A DNA stretch of 53,551 bases, filler included, from Sluysia triapertura (GCA_046118255.1; 4 parts of 4 records of this genome joined end to end with filler, not necessarily neighbours in it); one strand, 5' to 3'; positions 3,901 through 24,258 are shown, counted from the whole stretch's first letter. A program made the numbers and translations. The notes: generated by a model from the letters alone, not told the origin.

Positions 3901-6900
3901 ATAATTTTATAATTATCAGGAGATTGAATTTGTCGTTCAATAAATAAAATTATAATAAAGTCTTGATGCCTAAAGATTTTAAATAAAAAGAGCAACGTTC
4001 AAAATAAATATGGAGTGACGCACACAACCAAGAGACTTATTATGAATTTATTCAACAATTAATAAAGAGGCAGATTATTGTTGTCATTAAAGAACGAAAT
4101 AGTCGATATACAATTCGGGTTTCAATTGTTTTAGAATATTCGTTAGTGATATAAAGAAAGAGATTTTGTTTTACTTCAAGAAATCTAAATAATTTTTGAA
4201 TTCACAATCTTGATTCGATTATTTTCAAGAACCATAGAACATCGTTTCGAAATTGACGTTATTGATACTTGTAAGAATTTAATTTTAAAGACCATATTAA
4301 AATAAAATAAATTTATAATATTTGGGTAATTTAATATATTGTAAAATCAAAAGTTTAGAGTTAATATATTAACATTTTTGTTTGATTAGCTACAATTATG
4401 TACTTCTGTCCTTATTCTTGTACCGATATATTTGTGTATGGAATTATAATTATAATTATAATTATAAAATTATAAAATTATTATTTTTGTGAATTGTTAT
4501 CATTAACCGTTTCTTATTATTAGATATTACAATAAAATTAATTTAATAAGTCGTTACGTATTAAGAATTTAATAATTTAATTTAGAAAAATTACTAATTA
4601 AACTAATTATTAATTAAATTACTAATTAATTTTCAATTTAAATTTAAAATATTTTAGTTTATATTTTAATTAATTAAATTAATTATTATAGTTTTTAATT
4701 ACTTTAATTATAAAAGTGATCATTTTAAATTTGATTAAATCTTAATTCTCTATACTCAAAATATGGATAAAACTAATTATAGATAAAATATCGATTTATA
4801 ACAAATAATATCTAAATAGTTTATCGAAATGCGCTCACTTGTAATTAATAATCATGAATTAATAATTAATGTTTTCGAAATAATCTTAACTATTGGAAGA
4901 GTATTTGAAAAAATTTAATAATTTATTTTAAATAAAGTGCTTTTTCAGAAAAATTTTCGCATTCTGACGATATAAACTCATTATCCGCCGCAATTCAAAA
5001 ATACAAAAAATTAAATTAACTGTATAATGTTATACTATTCAAATGTCATAATTGTTATTGTTTTTAATACTTTCATGAAGCACGAGATGTGATTTCATTA
5101 TTATAATGTTTGTATTTTTATTTAAAAGTTGTTATTGAAAGAAAAAATTCTAAAATATCCCCAAAATCATAAACATTATTTAATCCACAGTGATTATAAA
5201 CACAATCAAAAAATCAATACAAATGTATAAACTAATCATTAATGTTATTGTGAAATTATTCCCTTTTATACTTTTCTACAAATATTACATAATATCTAAT
5301 TAATTTTTTTAATTCCATTCTAAAATATTTATTCTACAGCTAATTTTATTATGTGGCCAATTTATTTCTAAATTAACTAATTTCAAAGTATATATTGTTA
5401 CACTATTGTATTATAATACGATTTATTTTATGTTTTAAAATAATAATAATTATTATTATTGTACGCTATATATATGGGTAATCAAGAAATTTTTGTGAAT
5501 AATACTTTATTAAATATTTATAAGATATATTTTGATATTTTATAATCTAGATAAATATTATCAAATTAGATAATATTAAATTATACTCTTTTCTCTAATA
5601 TATCTTTAAAAGTTGAATTAGAAAAATGTAAAACTATATCTTATTTTTCAGATAGTACACTGTTGTAATAAATTAATATTTAATGTGGAATTATTGATTA
5701 AAATGTCAGGCTAACAATTAGTGATTAATTATTGTTACTAAATATATTAAGGTGTATCAGTCTTATTTTAGTAATAGAAAAACACAAACAATCTCATTTT
5801 CAACATCAGCATTACATTCAACATTATATTGGAGTTGTTAGAAAATAAGGATGGATCAATATTTTCTAAAGTTTTACAAAAAATTTGAAGTACAATTATT
5901 AAATAATTTAATTAAAATTGTTTGAAAATCATTTTTACTCAATAACTTTTCGTACGAATGAGCATTATATACAATGAAATTTACGAACAGCTAGGTAATA
6001 CAAAACTAGTCACTGCAGATAACGTTACATCATTTGTTTCAATTATTTATCTTTATAAAGTTAAATTTCTGTGATATAATGAGCAAACGCAGTAACAGTA
6101 TATATGTGAAATTAATGTTCGTTAAGAGATCATTTTGTGCAAAATATCGAAATTAACATGTAACGTATAATGCATTGTATGAAAGCTTTTGGAAATAGCT
6201 TTCCATTTGAATAGATTTGTATTCACTTTAATTTGATATATTATTATAAATGTTACATTAAATTTTAACTTTGTTATTTTCAAAATATGAGTTTGTTTGT
6301 CACAAATCTCATTATTTTTGGAAAATTGTTAAATAATACTAAGATAGAATTTCGATAGAAATTAATGTTCAAATTTAATTATTATAAACCGACTCGAAGA
6401 ATTAAGATGTAATGTCGACATGAACAATAAATGCCAAAATTCCGATTTTCTAGCAATTATCCAAACACTATATATAGAACTATATTTTGTTATCATTTTA
6501 AGCAGAAATATTTGAAATATTTTATTATTCTCTTCTGCTCAATAATGCATTAATGACAAACATTGATCGAATCTCAAAATTTTTAACTGATTTATTCATG
6601 ATTAGTTGTGATTTAAGTCTTTTGTTAATTTATTGTTATTTGGGTTATAATATTTACATAAGTTGTGTCACTCCTGGAATTGAGTTTTATAATTGATTTA
6701 GATTTTTCTAAGAGTGATTTACTTCGAGTTATACTTGAGATTGATTTATAGTGAATTAAAATTAACTACAATGTAAAGACAAATTTCTATTATTATGTAT
6801 TTTGCGATAAAGTTTAGAATATAGTGAGAATTGTGTTAGAATTGTTTAACTTATTATAGATAATCTTATATTCAATAATAATAAAATCTATAATAATTAT

Positions 6901-11132: not shown

Positions 11133-11145
11133 AAAAAAAGCAAGC
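11133..11145 (+). repeat. Left inverted terminal repeat AAAAAAAGCAAGC
   Basis: Exact reverse complement of 24246-24258. Confidence 0.9.
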
Positions 11146-11196
11146 CCAAGGGAAATTTTCTTTTTTCCCCATTTACTAGTAAATTGCTAGTGGGCT
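11143..11196 (-). terminator. Terminal hairpin cluster, possible terminator or origin structure
   Basis: AGCCCA (11143-11148) pairs with TGGGCT (11191-11196); internal GGGAAA/TTTCCC stem and perfect palindrome ATTTACTAGTAAAT (11171-11184); a T-run follows on the minus strand. Confidence 0.35.
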
Positions 11197-11204
11197 ATAT
11201 TTAA

Positions 11205-11492
11205 TTAAAAGTATGTTAGGTGTTCTTGTTGTTTAGTCCCTTCTTGTTCAGCTTTTTTAATCACATTATTAAACATGTCTACTAGTTCACAATACATAGC
11301 ACAACAACCATATCTTAAGTGATTATATTTTAGAGCTAGTATTTCATCTTTCATTTCTTTTAGTTCTTGTAGTGCTAGCTTTGTCCCTTTTAGAAAATAG
11401 CCACCATAATATCTATTAGGGAGTGTGTAATAATGAGCTAGATTTTTCATTATTGTAGTAGCACTTCTTTTTTTGTTGTTGTTATTTGTCAT
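11205..11492 (-). CDS. Phage small hypothetical protein (95 aa), probably early
   Basis: ORF with AAAAGGA RBS and its own consensus promoter at 11537-11564. Confidence 0.8.
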   Translation of the reverse strand: MTNNNNKKRSATTIMKNLAHYYTLPNRYYGGYFLKGTKLALQELKEMKDEILALKYNHLRYGCCAMYCELVDMFNNVIKKAEQEGTKQQEHLTYF

Positions 11493-11536
11493 ATGTATTT
11501 GTCCTTTTCCTGAAACTATTTTTAGTTTCTAATTAT

Positions 11537-11564
11537 ATTATATATTATTTACTAGTAATGTCAA
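11537..11564 (-). promoter_or_regulatory. Sigma70-type promoter TTGACA-N16-TATAAT
   Basis: Perfect -35 and -10 hexamers on the minus strand upstream of ORF 11492. Confidence 0.75.
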
Positions 11565-11572
11565 TAGTTTTT

Positions 11573-11794
11573 TTAATTATTTTTTGTATTGATGATTTCA
11601 TATATTTCAAAATCTAAATCATCTATAGCTTCATTTACTTTTTGGAAAGCATCAATTAATTTATCTAGTTGTGATTTGGAAAATCTCCTACTAGCTTCAT
11701 CTTTGATATTATCATATAGATTAATTATTCTAGTATTTTGATTTAATAAATCATCTAGAAATTGTTTTTGTCTTTCATTTAAATTAAAGTTCAT
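11573..11794 (-). CDS. Phage small acidic helical hypothetical protein (73 aa)
   Basis: ORF with AGAAGGA RBS, starting 1 nt after the upstream gene's TAA. Confidence 0.8.
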   Translation of the reverse strand: MNFNLNERQKQFLDDLLNQNTRIINLYDNIKDEASRRFSKSQLDKLIDAFQKVNEAIDDLDFEIYEIINTKNN

Positions 11795-11795
11795 A

Positions 11796-12065
11796 TTATT
11801 TTCCTTCTCTTTCTATTCATTGTCCAGTTTTTCAATCTTTAACACCATCTAGACAATCTTTTATATTTTTTTCTAAACATCATAAAATAAATCTTGTTTT
11901 TCTTACTTCTATTCTAACTTTTGATAATTCAATCTTACATAATAAAAGTTCATCAGTAGTTAGATATTTTTTAATCATTGTTAAACTTTTTTGTTTTTTT
12001 AATAACTTCATATTGTAGTTATAATATTTTCTATATTCTTTTTCTTTTTCTAGTTTGTAGTTCAT
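11796..12065 (-). CDS. Phage basic hypothetical protein (89 aa, code 4)
   Basis: MNYKLEKEKEY...FILWCLEKNIKDCLDGVKDWKTGQWIEREGK; 3 in-frame TGA; GAAAGG RBS; TAA ends 1 nt before the next ATG. Confidence 0.8.
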
Positions 12066-12078
12066 TTTATTTACCTTT

Positions 12079-12387
12079 CTATTGTTGTCACACATATAAT
12101 ATTTTTTCATTATTCATAATATCAAATTGAGATTTTAACCCAAAAATATATGAATAATTAACATCTTCACATGATAAATAAATCTCTTGTAAATATTCCC
12201 TTAATTTTGCTCCATCAGGGCATATTTCTAATAGATTTCATATAATAATTTTACTATTTAGAAAGTTTCATATTCTCCCTACTTGATTGTCTTTTGTCAT
12301 TTCATATTGATTAGTTAACAATGCTAATTCATATTCTTTTTGAATAAATAAATTAATCATGTGTTCTACTCTTTGCTTTGTGTTCAT
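12079..12387 (-). CDS. Phage hypothetical protein (102 aa, code 4), absent from the ORF track
   Basis: AAGGAG RBS; MNTKQRVEHMINLFIQKEYELALL...ILYVWQQ; 3 in-frame TGA; TAG stop overlaps the next gene's RBS. Confidence 0.8.
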
Positions 12388-12439
12388 TTGGAACTCCTTG
12401 TAATTTTTCTAGAAAGCCTTTTTATAACTTTCTAGTTTA

Positions 12440-12467
12440 ATTTTACTAGATAAAAAATAAATGTCAA
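12440..12467 (-). promoter_or_regulatory. Sigma70-type promoter TTGACA-N16-TAAAAT for the leftward operon
   Basis: Near-consensus hexamers about 50 nt upstream of ATG 12387. Confidence 0.65.
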
Positions 12468-12509
12468 GAAAAATAATAAAAATTTTTCTAGTTTCGTATA
12501 TAATGCGAG

Positions 12510-12665
12510 TAAGGGCTTATTGTTGCTAGAAAATAAAACACACGGAGCCGTCTAATGAAAAAAGAAGCGAAAATTACCAAAAATAACAATTTTTTTGGCT
12601 CCTTTAAAGCACTAATTTTTATTAATTTAATAATTAACTAGCAAGAGAAAAAACAACCCCCTCCC
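12510..12665 (+). ncRNA. Candidate structured RNA (possible packaging RNA, pRNA)
   Basis: TATAAT at 12499-12504; nested stems AGGG/CCCT, TTGCTAG (12523-12529)/CTAGCAA (12638-12644), GGAGCC (12544-12549)/GGCTCC (12597-12602); largest non-coding gap in the phage. Confidence 0.35.
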
Positions 12666-12675
12666 ATATTAAATA

Positions 12676-12703
12676 TTGCTTTTAGAATAAGAAATGCTAT
12701 AAT
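12676..12703 (+). promoter_or_regulatory. Extended -10 promoter (TTGCTT-N16, TGCTATAAT), probably leaderless
   Basis: TGnTATAAT ends 6 nt before ATG 12710; no SD sequence. Confidence 0.65.
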
Positions 12704-12709
12704 GTAATT

Positions 12710-14803
12710 ATGATTCACAAAATATATCTTTCTACATTTACTCCCAACTGAATTAAAAGTGATAATAAACCATCATTTTTAACGGCATTAGCCTATAAAC
12801 AAACTGATAAAGTTAAAAATCGGGAAGTGTGAATGAATAACTTTTTTACTAACCCTCCGATAGAAGTTCCAGTAGTATTTATAGATAATTTACATCGTAG
12901 TTTTACAATTGAACAAAAGCCAAATGTCGCTCTTTTGAATTATACATATTGTAAGATGATAGATGAAAATAATTTTACTACTTATGGTTTTATTACTAAC
13001 TATGTTTACACAAATAAAAATCAATGTAAATATATTGTAGAAATTGATATTTGAACAACATATTACCCCCTATTAACATTCCAAAATAATAAAGAAGTAT
13101 TTGTGATTAATAAAATGTATAATCGTTATAATAAACAAAAGAATGGCTATTTTCGTAGTTCCTTATTAGATTTAAGCCACCCCGTTCAAAATATAGATAC
13201 GAAACATCGTGATTTTACAAATCTAATTCCTAATGGAGGGTATCAATTTGTTTATCGTGAAAAAACCCTTTTTCCTGATAGTTGAATACCAAAAGAATCG
13301 CCATTTAAACTACGAAATTATGCCTTTGACCAAATGAACCCAACTTTGGCTTATTCATCAGCCCCATATTTCCCGATAGGTTTTATTACTTTTGCCCGCA
13401 CTGATTTTGAAGCAAAAAACCCGAACTATAAAAACTATATTAATGCCGGGTGTTTACCAGTCCCATATATGATATACCATGGGTTAGCAGAAAGTCAAGA
13501 TGATTGAATTGATTTGACGTGATTAGGGAATGGAGTAGCAGTTTCAAAAGTTTCCTTTTCTTTATTTCCATTATTACCAAAATCATCATTAGTTTCCTTA
13601 ACAATTCCGTATAACTGAAGTGGAAGTTGAACCCAAACAGTTACATCGCAAGCACGTTTTTTTCCACCTTATTCCAACTTAAATACGAAAACTGAGAAAG
13701 TTGGTTATTTACCAACCCCCGCAACTAATTTTAACTATATGGTTGATTTTAATGATTATTATGGTATTTTTGGTAAACAAAATGGGAGTTTCTTATTATA
13801 TAGTGATTATCATTTAATTCGTGATTTACAAGGTGAGGACACTAAAAATAAATTATTTAACCCAAATATTCCTTATAATGTATGAGATGAACCTTTATTG
13901 TGAAAACAACCCCACATGTTACTAAAATTTTGTTATGGGGAAGTTTCCCAAAATTTCGGGTTACAATTTTTCGGCAGTCGTTTTTATAGTACAGCGATGA
14001 ATAATGAATATACAACTGGTTCTGCTATTAGATTTAAAGTCTTTAATATCTTAACGATTTATGCGGTAGAACACCATATTATTCCCGACACTGATTATTA
14101 TTTAAATTCATCACAAGTGGGAATAAATTTTGCGCCAAATGTAGTAAATATTACATCTCCTAAACTTAAAATTGTTAACAATGCGACATTACCACAAGTT
14201 AACGACAAATACCTCCAAATGTGAAGTCAAACCTCAAACTCAATGAATACCGGCTTAAATATTGCGCATGAAAAAATCGGGCAGGGAATATTAGGTGGTT
14301 TTGGAGCAGGAGCACTTGCCGGAGGGCCGATAGGAGGAATTGTGGGGGGAATTATGGGAGCGGCTAATGCCGGAATTAATGCCTTATTTGCTCATCAACA
14401 ATACGACGCTAAAATTGCTGATGCGCAACAATCACCATCAACTTTGAAAAATACGCAAAGTGAGTTTAGTATTAATATGAACTTAGCGAACTTTCAAATT
14501 ATACAAACACAATTACCAGATTTTCAAGCTAGACAATTATTTAACATTGTGAACACGGAAGGGTATAATGCGAAAAGATATGAAAAAATAGATGATAAAT
14601 GATTTTATAATCGTTGTTGATTTGATTATTTTAAAGTAGCGAATATTATGAATGCTTTAAATAGAGAAGTTCTATTACCTTTCTTTGTTTGAGAATATTT
14701 TGACGATTTATTTAAAAATGGGGTGCGAACATTTCACGAATCAATCTTTTATGTCGGTAAAATTGATTGAAATAATTGTGAAACTGATTATGCTGAATGA
14801 TAA
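12710..14803 (+). CDS. Tail protein, phi29 gp9-like (697 aa, code 4)
   Basis: One frame across four track ORFs with about 16 in-frame TGA. N-terminal YGFITNYVY...VEIDIWTTY and C-terminal LFKNGVRTFH match gp9-family motifs; internal Gly-rich hydrophobic segment. Confidence 0.85.
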
Positions 14804-16052
14804 TATCATTGATAATTTCAATTGAGAATATTGTGAATCTCAAAGTGGACGAAATAATGCTGGTTATTATTCTATTGCTAATGCTCACAAATTAGGTAAA
14901 GAAATTAATGCTTGATTATATTTTATTATGTCACCCCGTAACATCGGGAAATCAACAGCTATTTATAATGAAGTGCTAATCAAAGCCTATAATGAGAATA
15001 AAAAGGTATTATTTTTAAGAAGGACATTAGCCGAAGCCAAATCTCTTGCGCAATCGTTAGAGGAGTTTTACGCATTATATTTTGAAACAAAAACCTATAT
15101 TGTGAAAGAGGACAACCGCTATTTACTTTATACTTATCAAAATGAAAATGAGTTTTCCAAAAGCTATACATCTTATAAGATTCGGGAAAATCTTATCAAT
15201 GATGGAAAACTAGTTGGTTATTTTACCTATTTACAAGGCGCTACTAGTAATAAATCAATGAACGTGACGCCGGTTGATATTATTTTCTTTGATGAAATTG
15301 TTGCGGAACACAAGCGAATTATTACTAATGAATTACAATTATTAATTTCCTTAATTTCTACCTATCAAAGATATCGTAATGCGGTAATTTATTTTGTGTC
15401 TAATAATCTAGAAGGAAATTATAAATATCTTGATTTCTTTTTACCAAACCAAACTCTCCCGGAAAAAGGAAAATGTAAATCTTATCATTCTAAAAGAATA
15501 CTAGAATATGATGGAATGAATGTTAATGCTGATGTCTCAATTGTCATTGATATTCCCAAAATGTCCAAAGAATTACTAGAGTTAACCCCTAACTCTACTA
15601 AAGCTCTTGCCTCGTTAAACGAGCATGCTTACGAATATCTCCTAGGTGGCGCGAACCCTGATAACTTAGAACTAGTTGTTTACCCGCAAAACTTAAAAGA
15701 AATTACCCATCTCTTTAATTTATATATTGCTAACATTGATATCTTAAGTGGTGGCGGAGTTGGTTTTTATCGGGCTTTAAAAGATAATCGTCATATTTTT
15801 TATGTTTCCAAAATCTACAAACCATTATTATCATCTACTAAAAATTACGCATTAGATAATATTGCCAAAATTAATTATGGGTTAGATATGGTGATTAGTG
15901 ATAGTTGTTTTAATAATATTTTAAAATGATGTAAATATAAAAGTTTATGGTATAATAATAATACTTATAAAAATGTAATAATGAATATCATTAATTTAGT
16001 TGATAGTCAAGAGAGCGAGTTAGAATTAAAATATGAAAAAGCCAAAGATTAG
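14790..16052 (+). CDS. DNA packaging ATPase, phi29 gp16-like (420 aa, code 4)
   Basis: Walker A SPRNIGKST, FLRR motif, Walker B IIFFDE; overlaps both neighbouring genes. Confidence 0.9.
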
Positions 16053-16632
16053 TGCGGCAACCCTTTTAAAAAAATATGGAAAATTACCAGCCGAAGTTAG
16101 AAAATATTTAAATGTGAGTGCCCAACAAGAACAAATACACGAAATTAGAAAAATTAAACAACGCATTTATTATCGTAATTTAAAAATTAAAAATGTTAAA
16201 CTCCGTTATCTAGCAGCGGGGTTACCACTTTTAGATTTTGAAAAGTATTATAAATTACAAATGGTTTCTACTAAGGGAATTAAAAATATGTCCGTATTAC
16301 GCAACATTGAAAAAACATTAAATCGTAGTTTAAAGGTTAATTGAGAAAAAGAAATTAAAAAAGCTGTGCGCCAACAATCTCGCACTCAACGTGCTCGTTT
16401 AAAACAAACTGAACGTTACCAACTTTTAGATTTATTAAAATCAGAATTACAAAAAGGCGATAGTGCGAATAAGAATGTTGTTAATATGTTAAAAAGGGAA
16501 ATATATGCTCGTGTCCGTAATGGAGAATATGAAAACCCCCTTACAAATGTTCTAGAAAATTATTTGGCGGAAGGGTTAGATGCGGAAGCATTAAATTATT
16601 TCTTGCGTTTTGTTTTAACTGTGGTAAAATAA
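16033..16632 (+). CDS. Probable terminal protein (199 aa, code 4)
   Basis: Two track ORFs join through one TGA. Strongly basic N-terminal half and helical C-terminal half, upstream of SSB and pPolB. The function is inferred from position and composition only. Confidence 0.55.
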
Positions 16633-16688
16633 TAATAAGCGAAAATCTCCGCGCATGATAATAGATAGATAGAAAGTGAAATTAACAA

Positions 16689-17000
16689 ATGATTAATTTA
16701 GATGAATTTAAAAAATATAGTCCAAAAATATATGATGTAGAAGGGAAATTTATTGTTAAAGATATTTCTGCTAAAGGAATAAACTTTAAAGCATATTCGC
16801 TAGTATTGTCAAACGATACAAAAAACGTGTGAATAAAATTAAGCAAATATGATGTTAATAAATTTTTACCAACTGCCAAATCAGGCGATAAAATTAGAGT
16901 GAAAGGTGAATATACTGTTAGTTCCAAATTTAGTGAAAAACATAATACTAGTTTTGAAACTCATAAAATCATCATTCACGATGCCGAAATTGTGAAGTAA
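16689..17000 (+). CDS. Probable OB-fold single-stranded DNA-binding protein (103 aa, code 4)
   Basis: MINLDEFKKY...AKSGDKIRVKGEYTV resembles the SSB KKGxxVxVxG strand; AGAAAG RBS; 1 in-frame TGA; absent from the ORF track. Confidence 0.65.
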
Positions 17001-17006
17001 TTAATG

Positions 17007-17030
17007 AATAGGGGTTAGATAACCTCTATT
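17007..17030 (+). terminator. Intergenic hairpin between SSB and polymerase genes
   Basis: AATAGGGGTT-AGAT-AACCTCTATT, a 10-bp stem with one G-U pair and a weak U-tail. Confidence 0.5.
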
Positions 17031-17053
17031 AATAATTATTTTAAAGGAATAAA

Positions 17054-18760
17054 ATGAATACAAGTTATCGTCCGACTTATGTGGCTGATTTAGAAACCCT
17101 AAATGAAACTGATACTTTAATTAATGGTAAACCTGATAGTTGATTGTGAGTAATTATTAATTTGAATAATGAAAAGGAAATCTATAAAGGTGTTAAACTA
17201 GCAGAAATGTTAGAACAATTTGATAAGTTAGGAAGTTGTAATGTTTATTTTCATAATGGGGGAAAATTTGATTTTTGATATCTAGTAAGTGAAATGATTA
17301 ATAATAAATTTTACCCGATGTATTTTGAGAATAATCAAGCATTTCTAAAACCTTACCAGTTCCGTTTATTAAATATTAAAAATAATATTTTTAGCCTACA
17401 AGTTTGTTTTCCAAATGGCGGCATTATTAATTTTAAAGATAGTCTAAAACTAATTCCCGCCTCAATAAAATCACTAGACATTAATACTGAGGAAAAAAAA
17501 GTGGAACTAGATTTTGATAAATCACGCCTTTACATTAAAACCATTGCTGATTTAAATGAATTAGAAATTGCTAGATGTGTAAATGATTGTCGCATTATTA
17601 TACCATATTTAAAAAAATTTCAACAAACTTTTACCACAAAAACGACGATTGCGAGTACCTCATTTGCTAATTGTCGCAACAATTTTAAAGAATTCTTTAA
17701 TAATGAATTAATGAATAGTTTAAGTGAGGAGGAATGAGATTATGTCAAACGCAGTTATGAAGGAGGGTATGTTTATTTAAACCCTAAATACCAAAATATT
17801 CCGTTAAATGACATTTACACGTATGATGTCAATAGTGCGTATCCATTTCAGATGACGAAGGAATTGCCATATGGGAAAATGCTTACGCGCAAACCAAAAG
17901 AACCACATACAATTTTAATGGAAGTATATATTGTCAAAGCCAAATTAAAAACTGGTTTTCACCCTTACATCTACACTGATAAAAAAGAAAATGGAACAAA
18001 AATTTATCATGATAAAATTAAAAATAAAGTGCTGATTATGTGAGATTTTGAATTAGATTTAATCAAAGAACTTTATGAAATAGAGTATTATATCACAAAT
18101 CGTAAATATTTCCTAACAAAAAAATATTTAAGTGATTATATTACTAATTTATATCACAAACGTCTTGACGCCAAAAATAATCATGATAATATATTAGCCC
18201 TAATTTACAAATTGATTCTTAATTCTCTATACGGAAAATTTGGACAAAATTATAATACAAAAGAAAGGAAACTTGAACTAGTTAGAGGAAAAGAACCAAA
18301 AAAATATGAGCGTTACTTTAAAGTTGGGGAAAATGTGTGATATGTTTTCAAGGAATATGAAATGAAAACTGCCCAAATCTACCCGGTTCAGGTAGCTAGT
18401 TATATTACTGCCAAACAACGAGTTTATATTCATTCATTCATCATTAAATACCGCGATATCTTTGTGTATACGGACACTGATAGTTTGAAGTTAACCCAAC
18501 CCATTCCTGAGGAAAACGCTATCTCTCATAAACTAGGTGATTTGAAATATGAAAAACTAGATAAAAATTTTTATATCATTCGTCCAAAAACTTATATGGG
18601 AGATGGTAAAGCAACGATTACCGGACTTAATAAAAATGTTCAAATTACCATGAAAGATTTAGAAAATGTTGTAATAAAAATTGCGAATGGTAAGACAATT
18701 AACAAAATAATTAATGGTTGTCCATTCATAAAAAATGTTGATTATCTACTAGAAAAATAG
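17054..18760 (+). CDS. Protein-primed family B DNA polymerase (568 aa, code 4)
   Basis: ExoI VADLET, ExoII YFHNGGKFD, SYEGG, motif A YDVNSAYP, motif B KLILNSLYGKFG, ASYITA, motif C YTDTDS, RPKTY; AAAGGA RBS; 6 in-frame TGA. Confidence 0.97.
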
Positions 18761-18766
18761 TATAAT
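18738..18766 (+). promoter_or_regulatory. Promoter TTGATT-N17-TATAAT, probably leaderless
   Basis: The -10 ends 7 nt before ATG 18774; no SD sequence. Confidence 0.6.
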
Positions 18767-18773
18767 ATATAAT

Positions 18774-19775
18774 ATGAGTAACTGAATACCTTTAAATAAT
18801 ACAACGTTAATGAATAACGTTATCAAATCGTTAACTGATTTAAATGTTAACAACCCTTTTTACATGCGTCAAATCTTAAAATCAATGAATAGATTTAAGA
18901 TTGTTTGTAAGAAAAAAGAATGAGAAAAAGAATGGGAAGCATCTTGAAATGCGGCGGCTTTTTATTTATGAATTACCGGCATTTCGGCAATTAGAAAAAT
19001 TGATGTTGGCGGCAATATTTATTTTAAATCTTATAATTTATCACCAACCGCTTATAATACTAATTTTGAAGTAATTGATGGAATTGCTTGTTTAAATCAA
19101 TGGTTTTCCTCAACTAGACAAAATGAAAGTCAAATCACTTATAAATTAAAAAACATTCCTAATGATGAGGAATGAGTTGTATTAAAAAATAATATTTTAA
19201 ATGTTCCAACTTGATTTTTTATTAAAGATTATTTGAATCTCCAAAATGAAACATTGAAAGCCTTTGCCTCAAATCTAAAAATGTCGTTAACAAAAATGTT
19301 ATTTTTCACTGATACTGGTGATGAAGGTAACTTGTTACGCAAAAGAATTGAAAAGGTTATTAAAGATGATGAATATAGAGGTATTTATGTTATTGATGGA
19401 AATGATGCTGACAAGATGAATATTTTTTCTAAAGAAAATATTGTTAAAATTGATGTTCCCTCAGAAATTAACCGCTATTTAGATGTTATTGATAATTTAG
19501 ATGAGAAAATCGGTAGCGCCATCGGGTATGAAACTGATATCAATTCTAAAAAAGAACGTAAAATTACTGATGAAAGTAAACAGGACAAAGTAGAAATTTT
19601 ACTAGCAAAATATAATTTCCGCATGTATCTAGAAATTGCTGTTAAAGAAATGAATAAAAAATGAGGTGGCGATTATTTTGAACTTGTTGATGTGGGCGAA
19701 TTACTAGCGCCAAAAGAAGCCGAGGAAACTAGTGAGGAGGTGAAAGAAAATGAAAATACAGACAAAACAATTTAA
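18774..19775 (+). CDS. Head-tail connector (portal), phi29 gp10-like (333 aa, code 4)
   Basis: IGYETDINSKKERKITDE matches the gp10 KKERxxxDE motif; 7 in-frame TGA. Confidence 0.88.
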
Positions 19776-22152
19776 GGACTTATACCCTGATTTTAAACAT
19801 TGAACAAATCTTATTCTTAACCCATTAAAAAAAGTGGTACCACCAAATCAAGAATGAATGAATGATAAAATGTGTTATTATTCACAAGAACTAATTTATA
19901 ATAATATGATGTTACGTTATGCTAGTAGATACGGTGTCTTTCTAGATAATGATATGAACCGCAAGATTATTTATATTATGGAACTCCATTTACCAGAGTT
20001 GTATATTAACACTTTAGTCTTTAAAAAAGGTAATCTAGATGATGATTTTGATTTAGATAATATCGGTGAAAATGAAAAATCAAAAACTAATTTAGTTAAT
20101 GATAATACAATCAACACGGCAAATGCCGAAATGTCAACATCTAACCCATCTAAAGATTGAACTGATAAAGATATTGCGAACACAAAAGAATTTCAAGCCA
20201 ACAAAGGAAAACAAGATATAATTTCTATTCGTAGTAAAACTGATAGATTAAAAAATTATGAAAGTTTGCGTGATGATAATTTCACAACTTTAATGGAAAA
20301 ATTTTTAAATCGTTTTGCGTCTCTATTTGTTCCTTATAGTAATTATACTGATATTCCTGATAATGATAATCACCATTATTTAAGTGGTAATGATATTAAA
20401 GTTGATGAATATTTACATTATGATTTTAATAGTTCTACAAATAAAGCTACAATCGGGAGCAAGTTATATAGTAACATTCATGTTAAAGATTTACCAAATG
20501 GGGTAAATACTTTATGTTATGAACTAGAATATGGTAATCATGTATTTTGTGGGCGAGCTAATGGAATGGTAATTTGTGATGAATTACAACCAAAATTAAT
20601 TTATAATATTCGTCAGATTATTTTTGATAGTAATTCCATTACTATCTATTATAACATTCTTAATGGAACGACAAATGCGATTAACCCAGTTCAAGATTTT
20701 TCAATGGTGATGAAATATATTTTGAAAAAAGGGGAAAATGTCCGTAAAATTACTTATCAACAATTTATTAAAGGGGCTTTACCAACTCAAATACTAGATA
20801 AAGATTTTAATAATGCTTGTTTACGAAATATTGCTGATGGAGTTAATGATAATGATGCGGTTTCAATGCGTCAATTAAAAAATATTAGACCGATAGGTGA
20901 TTCACCTTATTTATATTTAACTGATAAAACTACGCTAGCGACAATACTAAGTCAAAATGATAACTTAACAATTGCCCATAATTATATTTATATGTATGAT
21001 AATACGGCTTATAAACGTAATTTTAAAATCATTATTAATAATATTAATATTAATAATACTGATGGAAAAAATTGAAAAATAAGAATATGAGCCACAAGTC
21101 AAGAATTAATTATCGGTGATAAAATGCCGCATTTCCATCATTGAGAAATTTATTTAGAAAATGCTTATACCGGCAATACTCCTTTTGCCACTCTAGTAAA
21201 AGATAACCCAAAAATGTTTATTTTCCCTTTTCTTAACAAAAAAAGTTATGGAAGGGCTTATTATGATAGTGGTTGAATTGATGAAAATATGACACTTGCC
21301 GACATTCAATATAATTTAAATCGGGGCGTGAGATTGTATTGAAATCGCACATCACCGCCGCTTGAAATTGCGTTAATTATTGTTCCTAATAATAAAAAAA
21401 TGCCGGTTGAAATTTATGCTACTGCGATGTTTAATACTTTAAATCAAATAAAAATTTATAACCCAGCTTTTACCTCTGAGACTATGAATCGTACATTTGG
21501 CGAACTGATGAGTAATGGTAATACGAAAATGCCAACAGTTACCCCCATGATAAATAACTTAGAAATGAGTAATGGTGATGATTATAGTGATAAAACCCTT
21601 TCAAGTGTAATGACATGAGGGAAATGAAAAAAACACCAAGAAAGCGGCGTGAATTTGGTATTCCCAACGAAACAACGCTGAAATACCCAAGGGCCTTGAT
21701 ATCGCTTAACAATTGCGACTGATTCTGTCCTTTTTGAGTTTACCCCGAGATTTATGGACTACTTTACGAGTTTATCAAAAACTTTACCAATAACATATAC
21801 TTTTCCAAATGGTAAAACATATCAACCCCGATATAGTGTACTTTTTCGTGTAACAACGAAAGTTGCGCCAGGAATGATTGCTCGTGATATTGAATGTAAG
21901 GTACTAATAAGTGGTGGGGCTCCTTCTTTTAAAATTGAAAACATTGAGAAAATATCTCCTTACTCAACTTATTATGATAAAGATGGCTGAGCAAAAGTTA
22001 TGATTTGTGATTTTAGTAATAATAACGTCCCTGATGTTTTAAAAGTTAGTTTAAAAAATGGTTATGGAACGCAGTTTTCTTATGACGCCAACCTTTTCTG
22101 TTTAGAAACCGAATTAGTCCAAGAACCATATGCTACTACTAAGGAACAATAA
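19750..22152 (+). CDS. Lower-collar-like N-terminus fused to a fibre/receptor-binding region (800 aa, code 4)
   Basis: GAGGAGGTGA RBS; one frame across four track ORFs with about 13 TGA. Follows the connector as gp11 does; contains the adhesin-neck motif LRNIADGVNDNDAVSMRQL. Confidence 0.7.
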
Positions 22153-22325
22153 TGATAAAATTTTATGTGGAATTAATTGTTTTAACAATTGTTTTTCTAA
22201 CATTATTTTTAACCTCTATTATTACCAAACAAGAATGAGCGGAAAACTTTTTATATGGTTATATGGGTGGGTACTTTAGTTTTGTAGGAATTAATAAAAT
22301 AAAGAAATGGAGTAATAAAAAATAA
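22152..22325 (+). CDS. Small membrane protein, holin-like (57 aa, code 4)
   Basis: MIKFYVELIVLTIVFLTLFLTSIITKQEWAENFLYGYMGGYFSFVGINKIKKWSNKK; TAATG coupling; one or two TM segments and a basic tail. Confidence 0.65.
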
Positions 22326-22345
22326 TTTTGTTTTTTATTTAAATA

Positions 22346-22354
22346 TGATATAAT
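22346..22354 (+). promoter_or_regulatory. Extended -10 promoter TGATATAAT, probably leaderless
   Basis: Ends 6 nt before ATG 22361; no SD sequence. Confidence 0.6.
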
Positions 22355-22360
22355 ATAAAT

Positions 22361-22657
22361 ATGGAAAATGAAAAAGAATTAAAAAAAGTTGAAAATTCCA
22401 AAACAACTAAAAATGAGGAACCAAAAGAGGAAGCAAAAGTTAATCTAGAGGAATTAATCAAATCTAAGTTTGATGAACATTTTTCTCGTGAAAAAGAAAA
22501 ATTAACCGAAGCTGATAAAATTTGAAAGGAAAATATGACAAAATCACTAACTAATTTAATCAATAAAATTGATGGAATTAAAGTTCCAGAATCAAAGGAA
22601 AAACGCGAATTTAGTGATATTATTAAAGGTGTATTCCGCAAAGGAGGTGATAAATAA
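22361..22657 (+). CDS. Probable capsid scaffolding protein (98 aa, code 4)
   Basis: Charged helical E/K-rich ORF coupled (TAATG) to the capsid gene; 1 in-frame TGA. Confidence 0.7.
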
Positions 22658-23931
22658 TGAATAAACACGAAAAACTAGCGAAAGAGATGCTTACTGAAGT
22701 TGGTTTGGAACCTAATGAAAAAGGGTTACGAGAACTAGCAAATGCCGCTGAGGAAGCAGGTGGGAGACGTTTAAAACCAGACGCAAGTACAACAAATAGC
22801 TATGTTAATTTAATGTCTAAATTATCATATCAAATTACCGAAAATGCGTTTATTTTCAAAAATGTCTTTAATGAAATTGCTGAACACTTATCTTATAGTG
22901 CTGGGTACCGAGGAGTTCTTAACTTAATCGGTTTACTAAAAGCGGGTGATTTTGCTAAAATGCCGTTTACGCCAAATGGGACTGCTGATAATTCCAAAAC
23001 TGGTGAGGGTAGTTTAGGCAAACGTCCGTCTTTTGAGATAAAATCTCTAGGAAATATAAAATTCTACGTGGAAAACATTGTTAATGAATATCAATGAAAT
23101 CAAGCCTTTTTAACTCTCCAATCTCTAGGAAACTTTTTAACAAACTTTATTGAAAAAATTAACACTGATTTAGAATTGTTTGAATTTGAATTGATTAGAG
23201 GTATGATTAAGTTGTGTGGTTACAATGTTGTTTTAAATAGTATTGATGGAAGTTATGAAATTGATATTAATTTAACTGCTGCGAAAGCAAATAAAAATTG
23301 TAATATTCTTTTAGATGAAAAAACAATCTTGAGTGATGGAAAATTAATCGCGCAGGTGTTCTCTAACATTCTATCAAACTCAGTAGTAATGTCTACAGCC
23401 TTTACTGGTTTAAATGCTATTACTGATTCTACATATAAAATTCCTGGAAACCTTGATGTTGAGGAAAGTATTATTGTAATGTTACCTGACTATTGAAATA
23501 AAATTAAAGCCGAATCTTGAGCTTATGCGTTTAATGAAGTTAATTTACACTTTCCAACGGAAAATGTTATTTTATACCCATTTGACTTAAAACAACCTGT
23601 TAAACAAGATATTAAATTTGCTAATGGTTTAACGATGAATGATACAATTGATAAACAAAGTTGATACAAAGGTGATGTAATTGCTTATATTATTCCTAAA
23701 AAATTAATTAAGATAATTAGACAGTTTAACTTTGGTTTTGTCTCTATGTGAAACAATGGTGTTCAATGAACTACAATGACAAGTTCATTAGATTTAATGA
23801 TAAATGCTGCGTTACCATTCTTTAGAATTATAAAATACACAGGAACTACTCCGGCAACTGATAAACCTATTACAAGTATTCCAATGTTGATTAAAACTTT
23901 GAAAGATGCTATAAGTGAAGCAAATAAATAA
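22657..23931 (+). CDS. Major capsid protein, phi29 gp8-like (424 aa, code 4)
   Basis: AAAGGAGGTGA RBS; WNQAFLTLQSLGNFLTNFIEKINTDLELFEFELIR resembles the gp8 AFxSxxxFxxFxxxI...EY helix; 6 in-frame TGA. Confidence 0.82.
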
Positions 23932-23950
23932 AAAATTTTTAAAAAAACTA

Positions 23951-23979
23951 TTGACATTTTGATTTTTTTGATATATGAT
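23951..23979 (+). promoter_or_regulatory. Sigma70-type promoter TTGACA-N17-TATGAT
   Basis: Shares 20 nt with the left-end promoter and points toward the right terminus. Confidence 0.7.
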
Positions 23980-24053
23980 ATAGATAACTAGTTAAAGAAC
24001 TAGACAAAACTTTAGGAAGCTAGTTATATTTCTAGATAAAAAATACAACAATT

Positions 24054-24200
24054 ATGAGAAAACTAATAATTACATTAACCATCTTACTTTTATATAAATG
24101 TGAGGAATCTATTAAAGGTAACGACAAGATATCTCAAGATATCAGAGGCTTAATTAAAGATTTGATAAAATACTTAGAAGCTTATAAAAGAGTTAGATAG
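24054..24200 (+). CDS. Small terminal ORF (48 aa) with hydrophobic N-terminus
   Basis: MRKLIITLTILLLYKCEESIKGNDKISQDIRGLIKDLIKYLEAYKRVR, downstream of a promoter; no clear SD. Confidence 0.5.
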   Translation: MRKLIITLTILLLYKCEESIKGNDKISQDIRGLIKDLIKYLEAYKRVR

Positions 24201-24245
24201 AATCTCATAGTAGCAAGTTTATAAAGGAATAAAAATTCCTGATTA

Positions 24246-24258
24246 GCTTGCTTTTTTT
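24246..24258 (-). repeat. Right inverted terminal repeat
   Basis: GCTTGCTTTTTTT is the reverse complement of 11133-11145. Confidence 0.9.

What the first reader, a model, noticed from the sequence alone, without database searches (positions are those of the whole stretch)
11133..24258. Complete 13.1-kb phi29-like linear phage genome hidden in a eukaryotic assembly
Seen: the contig between two linkers is gene-dense and has SD sites, sigma70 promoters, a protein-primed PolB, a gp16-like ATPase, gp9/gp10/gp8-like structural genes and matching inverted ends. Established: this gene set defines phi29-like small podoviruses, and Mycoplasma phage P1 is a small Mollicutes example. Inference: this is a probably undescribed phage of a Mollicutes living in or on the sequenced invertebrate, co-assembled and not integrated. 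Few Mollicutes phages of this type are characterised.
Basis: partly seen in the sequence, partly recalled or inferred. Interest (0 to 1): 0.95.

Follow-up and report, generated by a model that had tools for sequence, protein, structure and literature searches.

The report
Small protein-primed phage using TGA as tryptophan
This 13.1-kb stretch is the apparently complete linear genome of a previously unseen, very divergent phi29-type mini-phage that reads TGA as tryptophan, so it almost certainly infects a wall-less bacterium (Mollicutes), a group from which only one phage of this type has been sequenced.

Summary
Window 11133-24258 (13,126 bp, 28% GC, 92% coding) makes sense only if TGA is read as a sense codon. 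Long-ORF coverage is then 0.84, against 0.18 under the standard code. There are 62 in-frame TGA and only 3 TGG. One polymerase TGA falls in a column that is Trp in 31 of 33 standard-code homologues.

Read this way, 13 intact genes appear:
- a protein-primed family-B DNA polymerase with all catalytic motifs;
- a gp16-type packaging ATPase;
- a gp10-type connector;
- a gp9-type tail knob;
- a weak but specific capsid candidate, preceded by a 98-aa scaffold-like gene.

The contig ends in a perfect 13-nt inverted repeat.

No cell-wall hydrolase was found, and no close relative turned up in any collection. Polymerase and ATPase identity never exceeds about 30%. None of 143 related contigs uses TGA as sense. 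Mycoplasma phage P1 is the only known analogue, and it is as distant as the Bacillus and Clostridium phages.

Verdict: a real phage genome and a new, deep-branching member of a known kind. The Mollicutes host, the free linear state and the link to the eukaryotic assembly remain inferences.

The parts
11133..11159 (.). Left terminal inverted repeat. The first 13 nt are perfect and the match is partial to about nt 27. It starts with a run of seven A.
   Evidence: (I15)
24232..24258 (.). Right terminal inverted repeat. The last 13 nt are the exact reverse complement of the left end.
11133..11196 (-). Hairpin followed by U7 at the left end, for the leftward transcript. The U-tract is the terminal T/A run of the inverted repeat.
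   Evidence: dG -17.8 kcal/mol, z -1.6
11205..11492 (-). m1, 95 aa, basic, no homologue. Early-type gene of unknown role.
11537..11564 (-). Promoter with a 12/12 match (TTGACA-16-TATAAT), inside a conserved box of about 29 nt that occurs three times.
   Evidence: (I4)
11573..11794 (-). m2, 73 aa, acidic, no homologue.
11796..12110 (-). m3, about 100 aa, very basic (Lys-rich). Candidate DNA-binding protein; the start codon is uncertain.
12079..12387 (-). m4, 102 aa, preceded by AAGGAG. No homologue.
12440..12467 (-). Second copy of the conserved promoter box (TTGACA-16-TAAAAT), driving the leftward genes.
   Evidence: (I5)
12695..12703 (+). TGnTATAAT extended -10 box, 6 nt before the ATG of p1. 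Candidate promoter of a leaderless rightward operon.
12710..14803 (+). p1, 697 aa: gp9-type tail knob. The C-terminal third matches the family and contains a Gly-rich hydrophobic stretch.
   Evidence: hhalign 92.7%, E 4.2e-7
14790..16052 (+). p2, gp16-type DNA packaging ATPase with Walker A and B motifs present. The open frame extends upstream to 14685; ATG 14790 is the likely start.
16033..16632 (+). p3, 199 aa, pI 10.1. Terminal-protein candidate by size, charge and position only.
   Evidence: no homology detected
16689..17000 (+). p4, 103 aa, strand-rich. Candidate single-strand DNA-binding protein (inference only).
17054..18760 (+). p5, 568 aa: protein-primed family-B DNA polymerase. Exo I-III, motifs A, B, C and KxY are all intact.
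18774..19775 (+). p6, 333 aa: upper collar connector (portal), gp10-type. TATAAT lies 7 nt before its ATG.
   Evidence: hmmsearch E 4e-7; hhalign 90.5%
19750..22152 (+). p7, about 800 aa. The N-terminal part resembles the N-terminus of P1 orf8 (tail fibre / lower-collar-like); the rest is an orphan. Candidate tail fibre or receptor-binding protein. GAGGAGG precedes the ATG at 19750.
22361..22657 (+). p8, 98 aa, highly charged, directly upstream of and abutting the capsid candidate. Scaffold candidate by position. TGnTATAAT lies 6 nt before its ATG.
22657..23931 (+). p9, 424 aa: major capsid protein candidate. It has the strongest SD (AAAGGAGGTGA) and a weak but specific match to the Phi29_MCP family.
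23951..23979 (+). Third copy of the conserved promoter box (TTGACA-17-TATGAT), pointing at the right end.
   Evidence: (I4)
24054..24200 (+). r1, a 48-aa ORF with a hydrophobic N-terminus, inside the structured right-end transcript. Coding status is uncertain.
24212..24258 (+). Hairpin followed by U7 at the right end. The stem and U-tract are formed by the inverted repeat itself.
   Evidence: dG -15.6 kcal/mol, z -2.5

Best explanation
The piece is the complete, or complete to within a few terminal bases, linear double-stranded DNA genome of a small short-tailed phage of the phi29 / protein-primed type. Its host reads TGA as tryptophan, so it is most likely a Mollicutes (Spiroplasma, Mycoplasma or Entomoplasmatales-like) present in the sequenced sample.

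How it most likely works. Steps marked 'shown' rest on homology found here; the rest is inferred from the phi29 model.
- Replication: starts at both ends and is carried out by the family-B polymerase (shown). It is primed by a terminal protein (inferred; the candidate is the basic 199-aa gene two genes upstream of the polymerase). The terminal run of seven A/T would allow the sliding-back step (inferred).
- Packaging: a gp16-type ATPase (shown) threads the DNA through a gp10-type connector (shown) into a prohead. The prohead would be built from the 424-aa capsid candidate and the 98-aa scaffold-like protein (weak or inferred).
- Entry: a gp9-type tail knob (shown) carries a Gly-rich hydrophobic segment at the family position where phi29 gp9 has its membrane-inserting loop (inferred). 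The roughly 800-aa orphan protein is the likely receptor binder.
- No peptidoglycan hydrolase is encoded, as expected for a wall-less host.
- Transcription uses host sigma-70-type promoters of two kinds. One is a conserved -35/-10 box present three times: twice driving the four small leftward genes and once driving a right-end transcript. The other is a -10 box only 6-7 nt before the ATG of three rightward genes, which suggests leaderless mRNAs.
- The outward transcripts at both ends terminate in hairpin-U7 structures formed by the inverted repeat itself.
For: Genetic code:
- Long-ORF coverage is 0.18 under code 11 and 0.84 with TGA as sense.
- There are 62 TGA against 3 TGG, and every gene ends in TAA or TAG.
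- One PolB TGA sits in a column that is W in 31 of 33 standard-code homologues; a second sits in an aromatic column, W12/Y11/F7.
- No tRNA gene is present.

Gene identities:
- PolB.
- ATPase.
- Connector: hmmsearch E 4e-7, hhalign 90.5%.
- Tail knob: hhalign 92.7%, with a Gly-rich hydrophobic stretch.
- Capsid: Pfam E 0.03; hhalign E 1.2e-3 over 253 collinear columns. It is the only element protein that the capsid profile picks out.

Ends: a 13-nt perfect inverted repeat lies exactly at the contig ends, with terminator hairpins there.

Expression signals.

No lysin or holin family was hit.

Mollicutes-like usage: the TGA:TGG ratio resembles those of phages P1, MAV1 and NSRO-P1. Codon-usage (RSCU) correlation is highest with the Spiroplasma poulsonii phage NSRO-P1 (0.90, against 0.80 and 0.83). 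Two PolB TGA codons share columns with TGA in the phage P1 polymerase.
Against: - No terminal protein, lower collar or packaging RNA could be recognised.
- The capsid assignment is below the usual thresholds.
- Structure prediction on stop-free pieces failed, with pLDDT about 40.
- The host was never observed. Other TGA=Trp bacteria cannot be excluded on sequence alone.
- Free linear topology is inferred from the contig ends only. A 13-nt inverted repeat is short, and the true ends could extend a little further.
- The codon-usage comparison used only three reference phages.
Confidence: 0.8

Rival explanations
1. A phage with its own stop-codon recoding, infecting a standard-code host, like the TGA- or TAG-recoded gut phages.
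For: Recoded phages exist (general knowledge). Many of the closest polymerase relatives come from gut and rumen metagenome bins.
Against: - No suppressor tRNA or any other tRNA gene is present.
- TGA occurs in 11 of the 13 genes, including the polymerase and three of the four small leftward genes.
- TGG is almost abolished, 3 against 62, which is a host-wide Mollicutes-like signature shared with P1, MAV1 and NSRO-P1.
- None of 143 related contigs is recoded.
Confidence: 0.05
2. A non-viral linear PolB plasmid, for example a mitochondrial linear plasmid. Mould, protozoan and cnidarian mitochondria also read TGA as Trp.
For: It shares the inverted terminal repeats, the protein-primed-type PolB (Pfam 'organellar and viral'), the low GC content and TGA read as Trp.
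Against: - It encodes a gp16-type packaging ATPase, a connector and a tail knob, which plasmids lack.
- No RNA polymerase family was hit.
- It has Shine-Dalgarno sites and canonical -35/-10 promoters.
- The polymerase groups with phage polymerases.
Confidence: 0.02
3. A prophage, a degraded copy or a laterally transferred insert inside a bacterial or eukaryotic chromosome. On this reading the contig ends are assembly breaks, not genome ends.
For: Topology was not measured. Phage P1 is described as temperate in one paper (10.1101/2023.12.16.572022).
Against: - Both contig ends stop exactly at a 13-nt perfect inverted repeat.
- There is no integrase or recombinase hit and no flanking non-phage sequence.
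- All 13 genes are intact with no breaks under TGA=Trp, and the polymerase motifs are intact.
Confidence: 0.07
4. The same phage, but of a non-Mollicutes TGA=Trp bacterium, for example a reduced insect endosymbiont.
For: The code test shows only that TGA is Trp.
Against: - Codon usage resembles that of Mollicutes phages.
- There is no peptidoglycan hydrolase.
- Two Trp (TGA) columns are shared with the Mycoplasma phage P1 polymerase.
- From general knowledge, tiny obligate endosymbionts are not known to carry lytic podophages.
Confidence: 0.06

Closest known systems
Mycoplasma phage P1 (Delislevirus P1, NC_002515; host Mycoplasmopsis pulmonis)
   Same: - A small linear dsDNA genome with inverted terminal repeats (11.66 kb against 13.13 kb), with TGA read as Trp.
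- A protein-primed-type PolB.
- A gp16-type ATPase. P1 orf3 matches the ATPase profile at hhalign 93.7%.
- A large gp9-like tail protein (P1 orf7) and a related tail-fibre N-terminus (P1 orf8 against p7, E 8e-3).
- No recognisable lysin.
- Two polymerase Trp (TGA) columns are shared, where 31-32 of the 37 standard-code homologues have D or T.
   Different: - PolB is only 24% identical, no closer than to Bacillus or Clostridium phages, and the two are sister in only 12 of 100 bootstraps.
- There is no DNA-level match.
- P1 has 350-bp repeats against 13 nt here.
- Gene order and strand layout differ.
- The other proteins are not detectably similar.
phi29-like phages of Firmicutes (Salasmaviridae such as Bacillus phage PumA2 and Lactococcus phage asccphi28; Guelinviridae such as Clostridium phage CPD2)
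   Same: - The hallmark set is shared: protein-primed PolB, gp16-type ATPase (PDB 7jq6, 5hd9), connector and tail knob, with a scaffold-then-capsid gene order.
- The terminal repeat is short.
- The four small leftward genes sit at the left end.
   Different: - Identity is 24-29% for PolB and the ATPase; the other proteins are detectable only with profiles.
- It uses code 4.
- The genome is 13 kb against 18-19 kb.
- No endolysin, holin, tail peptidoglycan hydrolase, head fibre or recognisable lower collar was found, and there is no Rfam pRNA hit.
- The replication genes sit in the middle of the rightward structural block rather than in a separate early operon.
Spiroplasma short-tailed phages (SpV3 group; sequenced NSRO-P1/P2, MSRO-P1, OL689227 etc.)
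   Same: - The likely host group is related.
- Codon usage is similar (RSCU r = 0.90).
- The morphology class is short-tailed (literature, PMC13375369).
   Different: Those genomes are about 19 kb. They encode large and small terminase, an SPP1-type portal and recombination genes, and they package by a headful, circularly permuted mechanism (10.1101/2021.12.09.471767). They have no PolB and no inverted ends.

Membership tests
phi29-type protein-primed small podophages (former Picovirinae, broad sense) | Linear dsDNA of about 11-21 kb with inverted terminal repeats | tested here: met
   13,126 bp with a 13-nt perfect inverted repeat exactly at both contig ends. Linearity itself is inferred, not measured.
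phi29-type protein-primed small podophages (former Picovirinae, broad sense) | Family-B DNA polymerase of the protein-primed type with intact exonuclease and polymerase motifs | tested here: met
   PF03175 above threshold on two pieces; PDB 1xhx; motifs intact.
phi29-type protein-primed small podophages (former Picovirinae, broad sense) | Terminal protein covalently bound to the 5' ends | tested here: inconclusive
   No similarity of any gene to a profile of terminal proteins. The basic 199-aa gene near the polymerase is a positional candidate. The covalent link is not testable from sequence.
phi29-type protein-primed small podophages (former Picovirinae, broad sense) | gp16-type packaging ATPase (no large/small terminase pair) | tested here: met
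   PF05894 25.3 bits against a cut-off of 25, PF03237; PHROG 2150 E 2.8e-21; PDB 7jq6 E 3.3e-7.
phi29-type protein-primed small podophages (former Picovirinae, broad sense) | gp10-type upper collar connector | tested here: met
   hmmsearch E 4e-7 in a 1,524-ORF set; hhalign 90.5%, E 1.3e-6, 159 columns.
phi29-type protein-primed small podophages (former Picovirinae, broad sense) | gp9-type tail knob | tested here: met
   hhalign 92.7%, E 4.2e-7, 170 columns; tblastn to the PumA2 tail protein, E 0.036.
phi29-type protein-primed small podophages (former Picovirinae, broad sense) | Phi29_MCP-type (HK97-fold) major capsid protein | tested here: inconclusive
   Pfam E 0.03, 14 bits against a cut-off of 27. 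hhalign E 1.2e-3, probability 19%, 253 collinear columns. AlphaFold on a piece gave pLDDT 40.
phi29-type protein-primed small podophages (former Picovirinae, broad sense) | Packaging RNA (pRNA), a feature of phi29 and its near relatives | tested here: not met
   No Rfam match at E <= 0.1. A structured right-end transcript (z -3.0) is an untested candidate. pRNA is not known to be required across all small podophages (general knowledge).
phi29-type protein-primed small podophages (former Picovirinae, broad sense) | Lower collar (gp11-type) | tested here: inconclusive
   No direct match. There is only a transitive hint: the p7 N-terminus resembles the P1 orf8 N-terminus, which resembles the lower-collar profile at 35%.
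Salasmaviridae / Guelinviridae (as named families) | Clear protein-level relatedness across most of the core genes | tested here: not met
   Only PolB and the ATPase are detectable by BLAST, at 24-29% identity. There is no DNA match.
Delislevirus (Mycoplasma phage P1) | Nucleotide-level similarity to P1 at genus level | tested here: not met
   No megablast match in the phage collection, which holds P1. PolB is 24% identical.
Delislevirus (Mycoplasma phage P1) | TGA read as Trp, with the PolB + ATPase + tail module architecture | tested here: met
Phage of a Mollicutes host | TGA = Trp throughout, low GC content, no cell-wall hydrolase | tested here: met
   no lysin family hit
Phage of a Mollicutes host | Direct link to a host (co-occurrence, spacers, prophage copies) | not testable with these tools
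   No relative was found in GTDB genomes. The read set and the rest of the assembly are not available.
Linear mitochondrial/cytoplasmic PolB plasmids | PolB plus a phage-type RNA polymerase, and no virion genes | tested here: not met
   No RNA polymerase hit. Packaging ATPase, connector and tail knob are present.

The most novel reading that the evidence does not exclude
The element would be the first genome of a family-level lineage of protein-primed podophages of arthropod- or invertebrate-associated Mollicutes. This might be the sequence counterpart of small short-tailed mycoplasma or spiroplasma virions that were seen by microscopy but never sequenced. It would also have unusual organisation: terminal repeats that double as transcription terminators, leaderless structural operons, and a structured right-end RNA that could stand in for the phi29 packaging RNA.
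Probability: 0.25. Interest if true: 0.6.

Novelty: new member of a known kind. Interest (0 to 1): 0.5.

Why it matters
Sequenced phages of Mollicutes are few, and P1 has been the only protein-primed one (PMC13375369; 10.1101/2023.12.16.572022).

A second genome, as distant from P1 as from the Bacillus and Clostridium phages, matters in three ways:
- It shows that this minimal phage type is older or more widespread in wall-less bacteria than one isolate suggested.
- It gives a natural example of what a phi29-type virion keeps when there is no cell wall to cross: tail knob, connector, ATPase and polymerase are retained, while no peptidoglycan hydrolase, holin or head fibre was recognised.
- It supplies marker genes for finding such phages in invertebrate sequencing data, where standard-code gene callers shred them.

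It also illustrates that 'contaminant' contigs in eukaryotic assemblies can hold complete, unknown phage genomes.

Tried and rejected
Searches that found nothing:
- megablast of the whole piece against phages;
- word-indexed protein searches with the 337-aa ATPase piece and the 304-aa piece of p7;
- IMG/VR, GTDB and JGI scans with the ATPase piece;
- exact-protein look-ups;
- plasmids;
- tblastn of the two capsid pieces and the N-terminal polymerase piece against phages;
- tRNA and Rfam scans;
- NCBIfam and PHROGs on the small genes.

The exhaustive phmmer search with the ATPase piece gave only distant hits (best E 3.6e-6, about 30% identity).

AlphaFold on two stop-free pieces gave pLDDT of about 40, so no fold search was run.

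A packaging RNA in the 12388-12709 spacer was rejected as unsupported (z +0.3 and -1.0). The 22153-22360 spacer is likewise unstructured.

A specific P1 + element polymerase clade is not supported by the tree (12 of 100 bootstraps).

Code 25 (TGA = Gly) was rejected. TGG is nearly absent, so Trp would vanish under that code, and a TGA sits in a near-invariant Trp column.

Shadow ORFs on the opposite strand were rejected by codon statistics.

A fast re-alignment lost the profile signals, so the profiles are the ones used.

Step left out: the remote tools cannot take full-length proteins that contain in-frame TGA. Pfam, PDB, PHROG, fold and database searches therefore used stop-free pieces by reference. 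Full-length comparisons were done only locally, with X at each TGA.

Slips and clarifications:
- The notebook gives residue numbers of four polymerase TGA codons. These are sense codons of the native code, not breaks. No gene of the element is broken.

Full report
**1. What is there**

The piece (window 11133-24258) is 13,126 bp, has no N and is 22-34% GC.

Under the bacterial standard code it looks non-coding. The longest ORF is 333 aa, and ORFs of at least 150 aa cover only 0.18 of the length. Reading TGA as a sense codon raises that coverage to 0.84. It yields 13 long ORFs, four leftward at the left end and nine rightward, and with the small right-end ORF r1 the coding fraction is 92%. A codon-usage log-odds score favours each of these 13 ORFs over all other frames and rejects the opposite-strand shadow ORFs.

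**2. Genetic code**

- The 13 genes hold 62 in-frame TGA and only 3 TGG. All of them end in TAA or TAG.
- I aligned the polymerase, with X at each TGA, against 37 standard-code homologues harvested from phage records and GTDB contigs.
  - One TGA lies in a column that is Trp in 31 of 33 homologues. The background Trp frequency is 1.1%.
  - A second TGA lies in an aromatic column (W12/Y11/F7).
- Code 25 (TGA = Gly) would leave the proteome with almost no Trp, so it is rejected.
- There is no tRNA gene. TGA occurs in the polymerase and in three of the four small leftward genes as well as in the structural genes. The host itself must therefore read TGA as Trp.
- No gene is broken under this code: 0 stops and 0 frameshifts.

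**3. Genes**

- *Polymerase (17054-18760).* Pieces hit Pfam DNA_pol_B_2 at E 6.5e-13 and 1.8e-14, PHROG 1907 and the PDB polymerase 1xhx. Exo I-III, motifs A, B, C and KxY are all present.
- *Packaging ATPase (14790-16052).* It hits Podovirus_Gp16 and Terminase_6N, PHROG 2150 at E 2.8e-21, and the solved encapsidation proteins 7jq6, 5hd9 and 7jqq.
- *Structural genes.* The remote tools cannot take proteins containing TGA. I therefore built local profiles of 22-27 sequences each from small-podophage contigs and compared them with the X-marked full-length proteins.
  - Connector profile against the 333-aa protein: hmmsearch E 4e-7; hhalign 90.5%, E 1.3e-6.
  - Tail-knob (gp9) profile against the 697-aa protein: 92.7%, E 4.2e-7.
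  - Capsid profile against the 424-aa protein: E 1.2e-3, probability 19%, 253 collinear columns.
  - None of the remaining 52 query-by-profile pairs exceeded 3% probability, so the weak capsid hit is at least specific.
- *Support for the capsid call.* It agrees with a sub-threshold Pfam Phi29_MCP hit and with the strongest ribosome-binding site in the genome. A 98-aa charged gene sits immediately upstream, as a scaffold gene would.
- *Tail knob detail.* Its matching region contains a Gly-rich hydrophobic stretch, which gives weak bacteriocin-like Pfam hits.
- *The roughly 800-aa protein.* Its N-terminus resembles that of P1 orf8, annotated as a tail fibre (E 8e-3). The rest has no relative anywhere.
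- *Not recognised.* No terminal protein or lower collar was found. The basic 199-aa and strand-rich 103-aa genes just upstream of the polymerase are positional candidates for terminal protein and SSB.
- *Absent families.* No lysin, holin, integrase or RNA polymerase family was hit.

**4. Ends and expression signals**

- The two contig ends are a perfect 13-nt inverted repeat beginning with seven A. Partial matching extends to about 27-31 nt.
- On the outward-reading strand, each end folds into a hairpin followed by U7. The repeat supplies part of the stem and the U-tract (right end z -2.5, left end z -1.6).
- The three best sigma-70 matches all fall in intergenic DNA and share a box of about 29 nt. 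Two drive the leftward genes. The third points at the right end.
- The right-end promoter leads into a roughly 270-nt structured region (z -3.0) that holds a doubtful 48-aa ORF.
- Three rightward genes (tail knob, connector, scaffold-like) have TATAAT 6-7 nt before the ATG and no SD. This suggests leaderless mRNAs.
- Internal genes carry SD-like sites.

**5. Relatives**

- Nothing similar exists at DNA level.
- The ATPase piece found no relative in several collections:
  - the word-indexed 5.8-billion-protein search;
  - IMG/VR;
  - GTDB;
  - JGI metagenomes.
- The exhaustive scan of 1.84 billion representatives gave nothing better than E 3.6e-6 at about 30% identity.
- A degenerate polymerase motif retrieved 63 GTDB and 80 IMG/VR contigs, mostly 11-17 kb and evidently small podophages.
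  - Their polymerases are at most 29.5% identical to this one.
  - Only the polymerase and the ATPase are BLAST-detectable.
  - None uses TGA as sense.
- Against named phages, polymerase identity is 24-28% to Lactococcus asccphi28, Clostridium CPD2, Bacillus PumA2 and Mycoplasma P1 alike.
- A neighbour-joining tree puts the element next to P1 among long branches, but as sister in only 12 of 100 bootstraps.
- Two of the element's six polymerase TGA codons share columns with TGA in P1, where 31-32 of the 37 standard-code homologues have D or T. This hints at common ancestry but is not proof.

**6. Host**

- The TGA:TGG ratio matches those of Mollicutes phages.
- RSCU correlates best with the Spiroplasma poulsonii phage NSRO-P1 (0.90), against 0.80 for P1 and 0.83 for MAV1. 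With three references this is a lead only.
- The lack of wall-degrading enzymes fits a wall-less host.
- The sequenced Spiroplasma short-tailed phages are a different kind, with terminase and headful packaging (10.1101/2021.12.09.471767).
- According to the review PMC13375369 and to 10.1101/2023.12.16.572022, P1 is the only sequenced phage of this type from Mollicutes.

**7. Verdict**

This is a new, very divergent member of the protein-primed small-podophage kind from a TGA=Trp host.

Four points remain unshown:
- the capsid fold;
- the terminal protein;
- the free linear state;
- the identity of the host and its link to the eukaryote.

**8. Limits and slips**

- Remote searches used stop-free pieces only. 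Full-length comparisons were local, with X at TGA.
- AlphaFold on pieces failed.
- They were used nowhere.

Noticed in passing
L002 (Mycoplasma phage P1, NC_002515) 3322-4494: P1 orf3 is annotated 'possible terminal protein', but it matches the gp16-type packaging ATPase profile (hhalign 93.7%, E 1.9e-7). P1 orf10 matches the capsid profile (56%) and orf7 the gp9 tail profile (47%). The record's annotation looks outdated.
   Followed up: partly
window 17054-18760 and L002 350-2434: Two of the six in-frame TGA (Trp) codons of the element's polymerase fall in the same alignment columns as TGA codons of the P1 polymerase. In those columns 31-32 of the 37 standard-code homologues have D or T. I estimate roughly 0.005 by chance. 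The tree does not confirm a P1 + element clade.
   Followed up: partly
window 11133-12700 and 23985-24035: CTAG is twice as frequent as expected overall (62 against 34). It is concentrated in the left early region (19 sites in 1.6 kb) and in the right-end leader (4 sites in 45 nt), mostly as TTCTAG or ACTAG next to the promoters. These could be operator sites for a phage regulator.
   Followed up: no
window 12695-12712, 18759-18776, 22346-22363: Three rightward genes start 6-7 nt after a TATAAT box (two with the TGn extension) and lack an SD, which suggests leaderless mRNAs. TATAAT-N5-8-ATG occurs 8 times against 3.3 expected.
   Followed up: partly
window 23951-24258: A promoter points at the right end, followed by a structured region of about 270 nt (z -3.0). 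The region holds a doubtful 48-aa ORF with a hydrophobic N-terminus and ends in a hairpin-U7 made by the terminal repeat. It could be a small membrane protein gene or a non-coding RNA. Rfam gives no pRNA hit.
   Followed up: partly
window 14225-14599: A Gly-rich hydrophobic stretch inside the tail-knob homology region gives weak hits to class II bacteriocin and microcin V families. It may be the membrane-inserting loop of the tail.
   Followed up: no
L005-L067 (GTDB contigs): Many 11-17 kb contigs binned into bacterial MAGs, and a few into archaeal ones (e.g. L006 Nitrososphaeria, L013 Nitrosopumilus, L053 Nanoarchaeia), carry related protein-primed-type polymerases. They look like small phage or plasmid genomes swept into bins.
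   Followed up: no
window 11796-12387: The two leftward genes m3 and m4 overlap by up to 47 nt if m3 starts at its first possible codon. An internal ATG with an SD-like site would remove the overlap, so the m3 start is unresolved.
   Followed up: no
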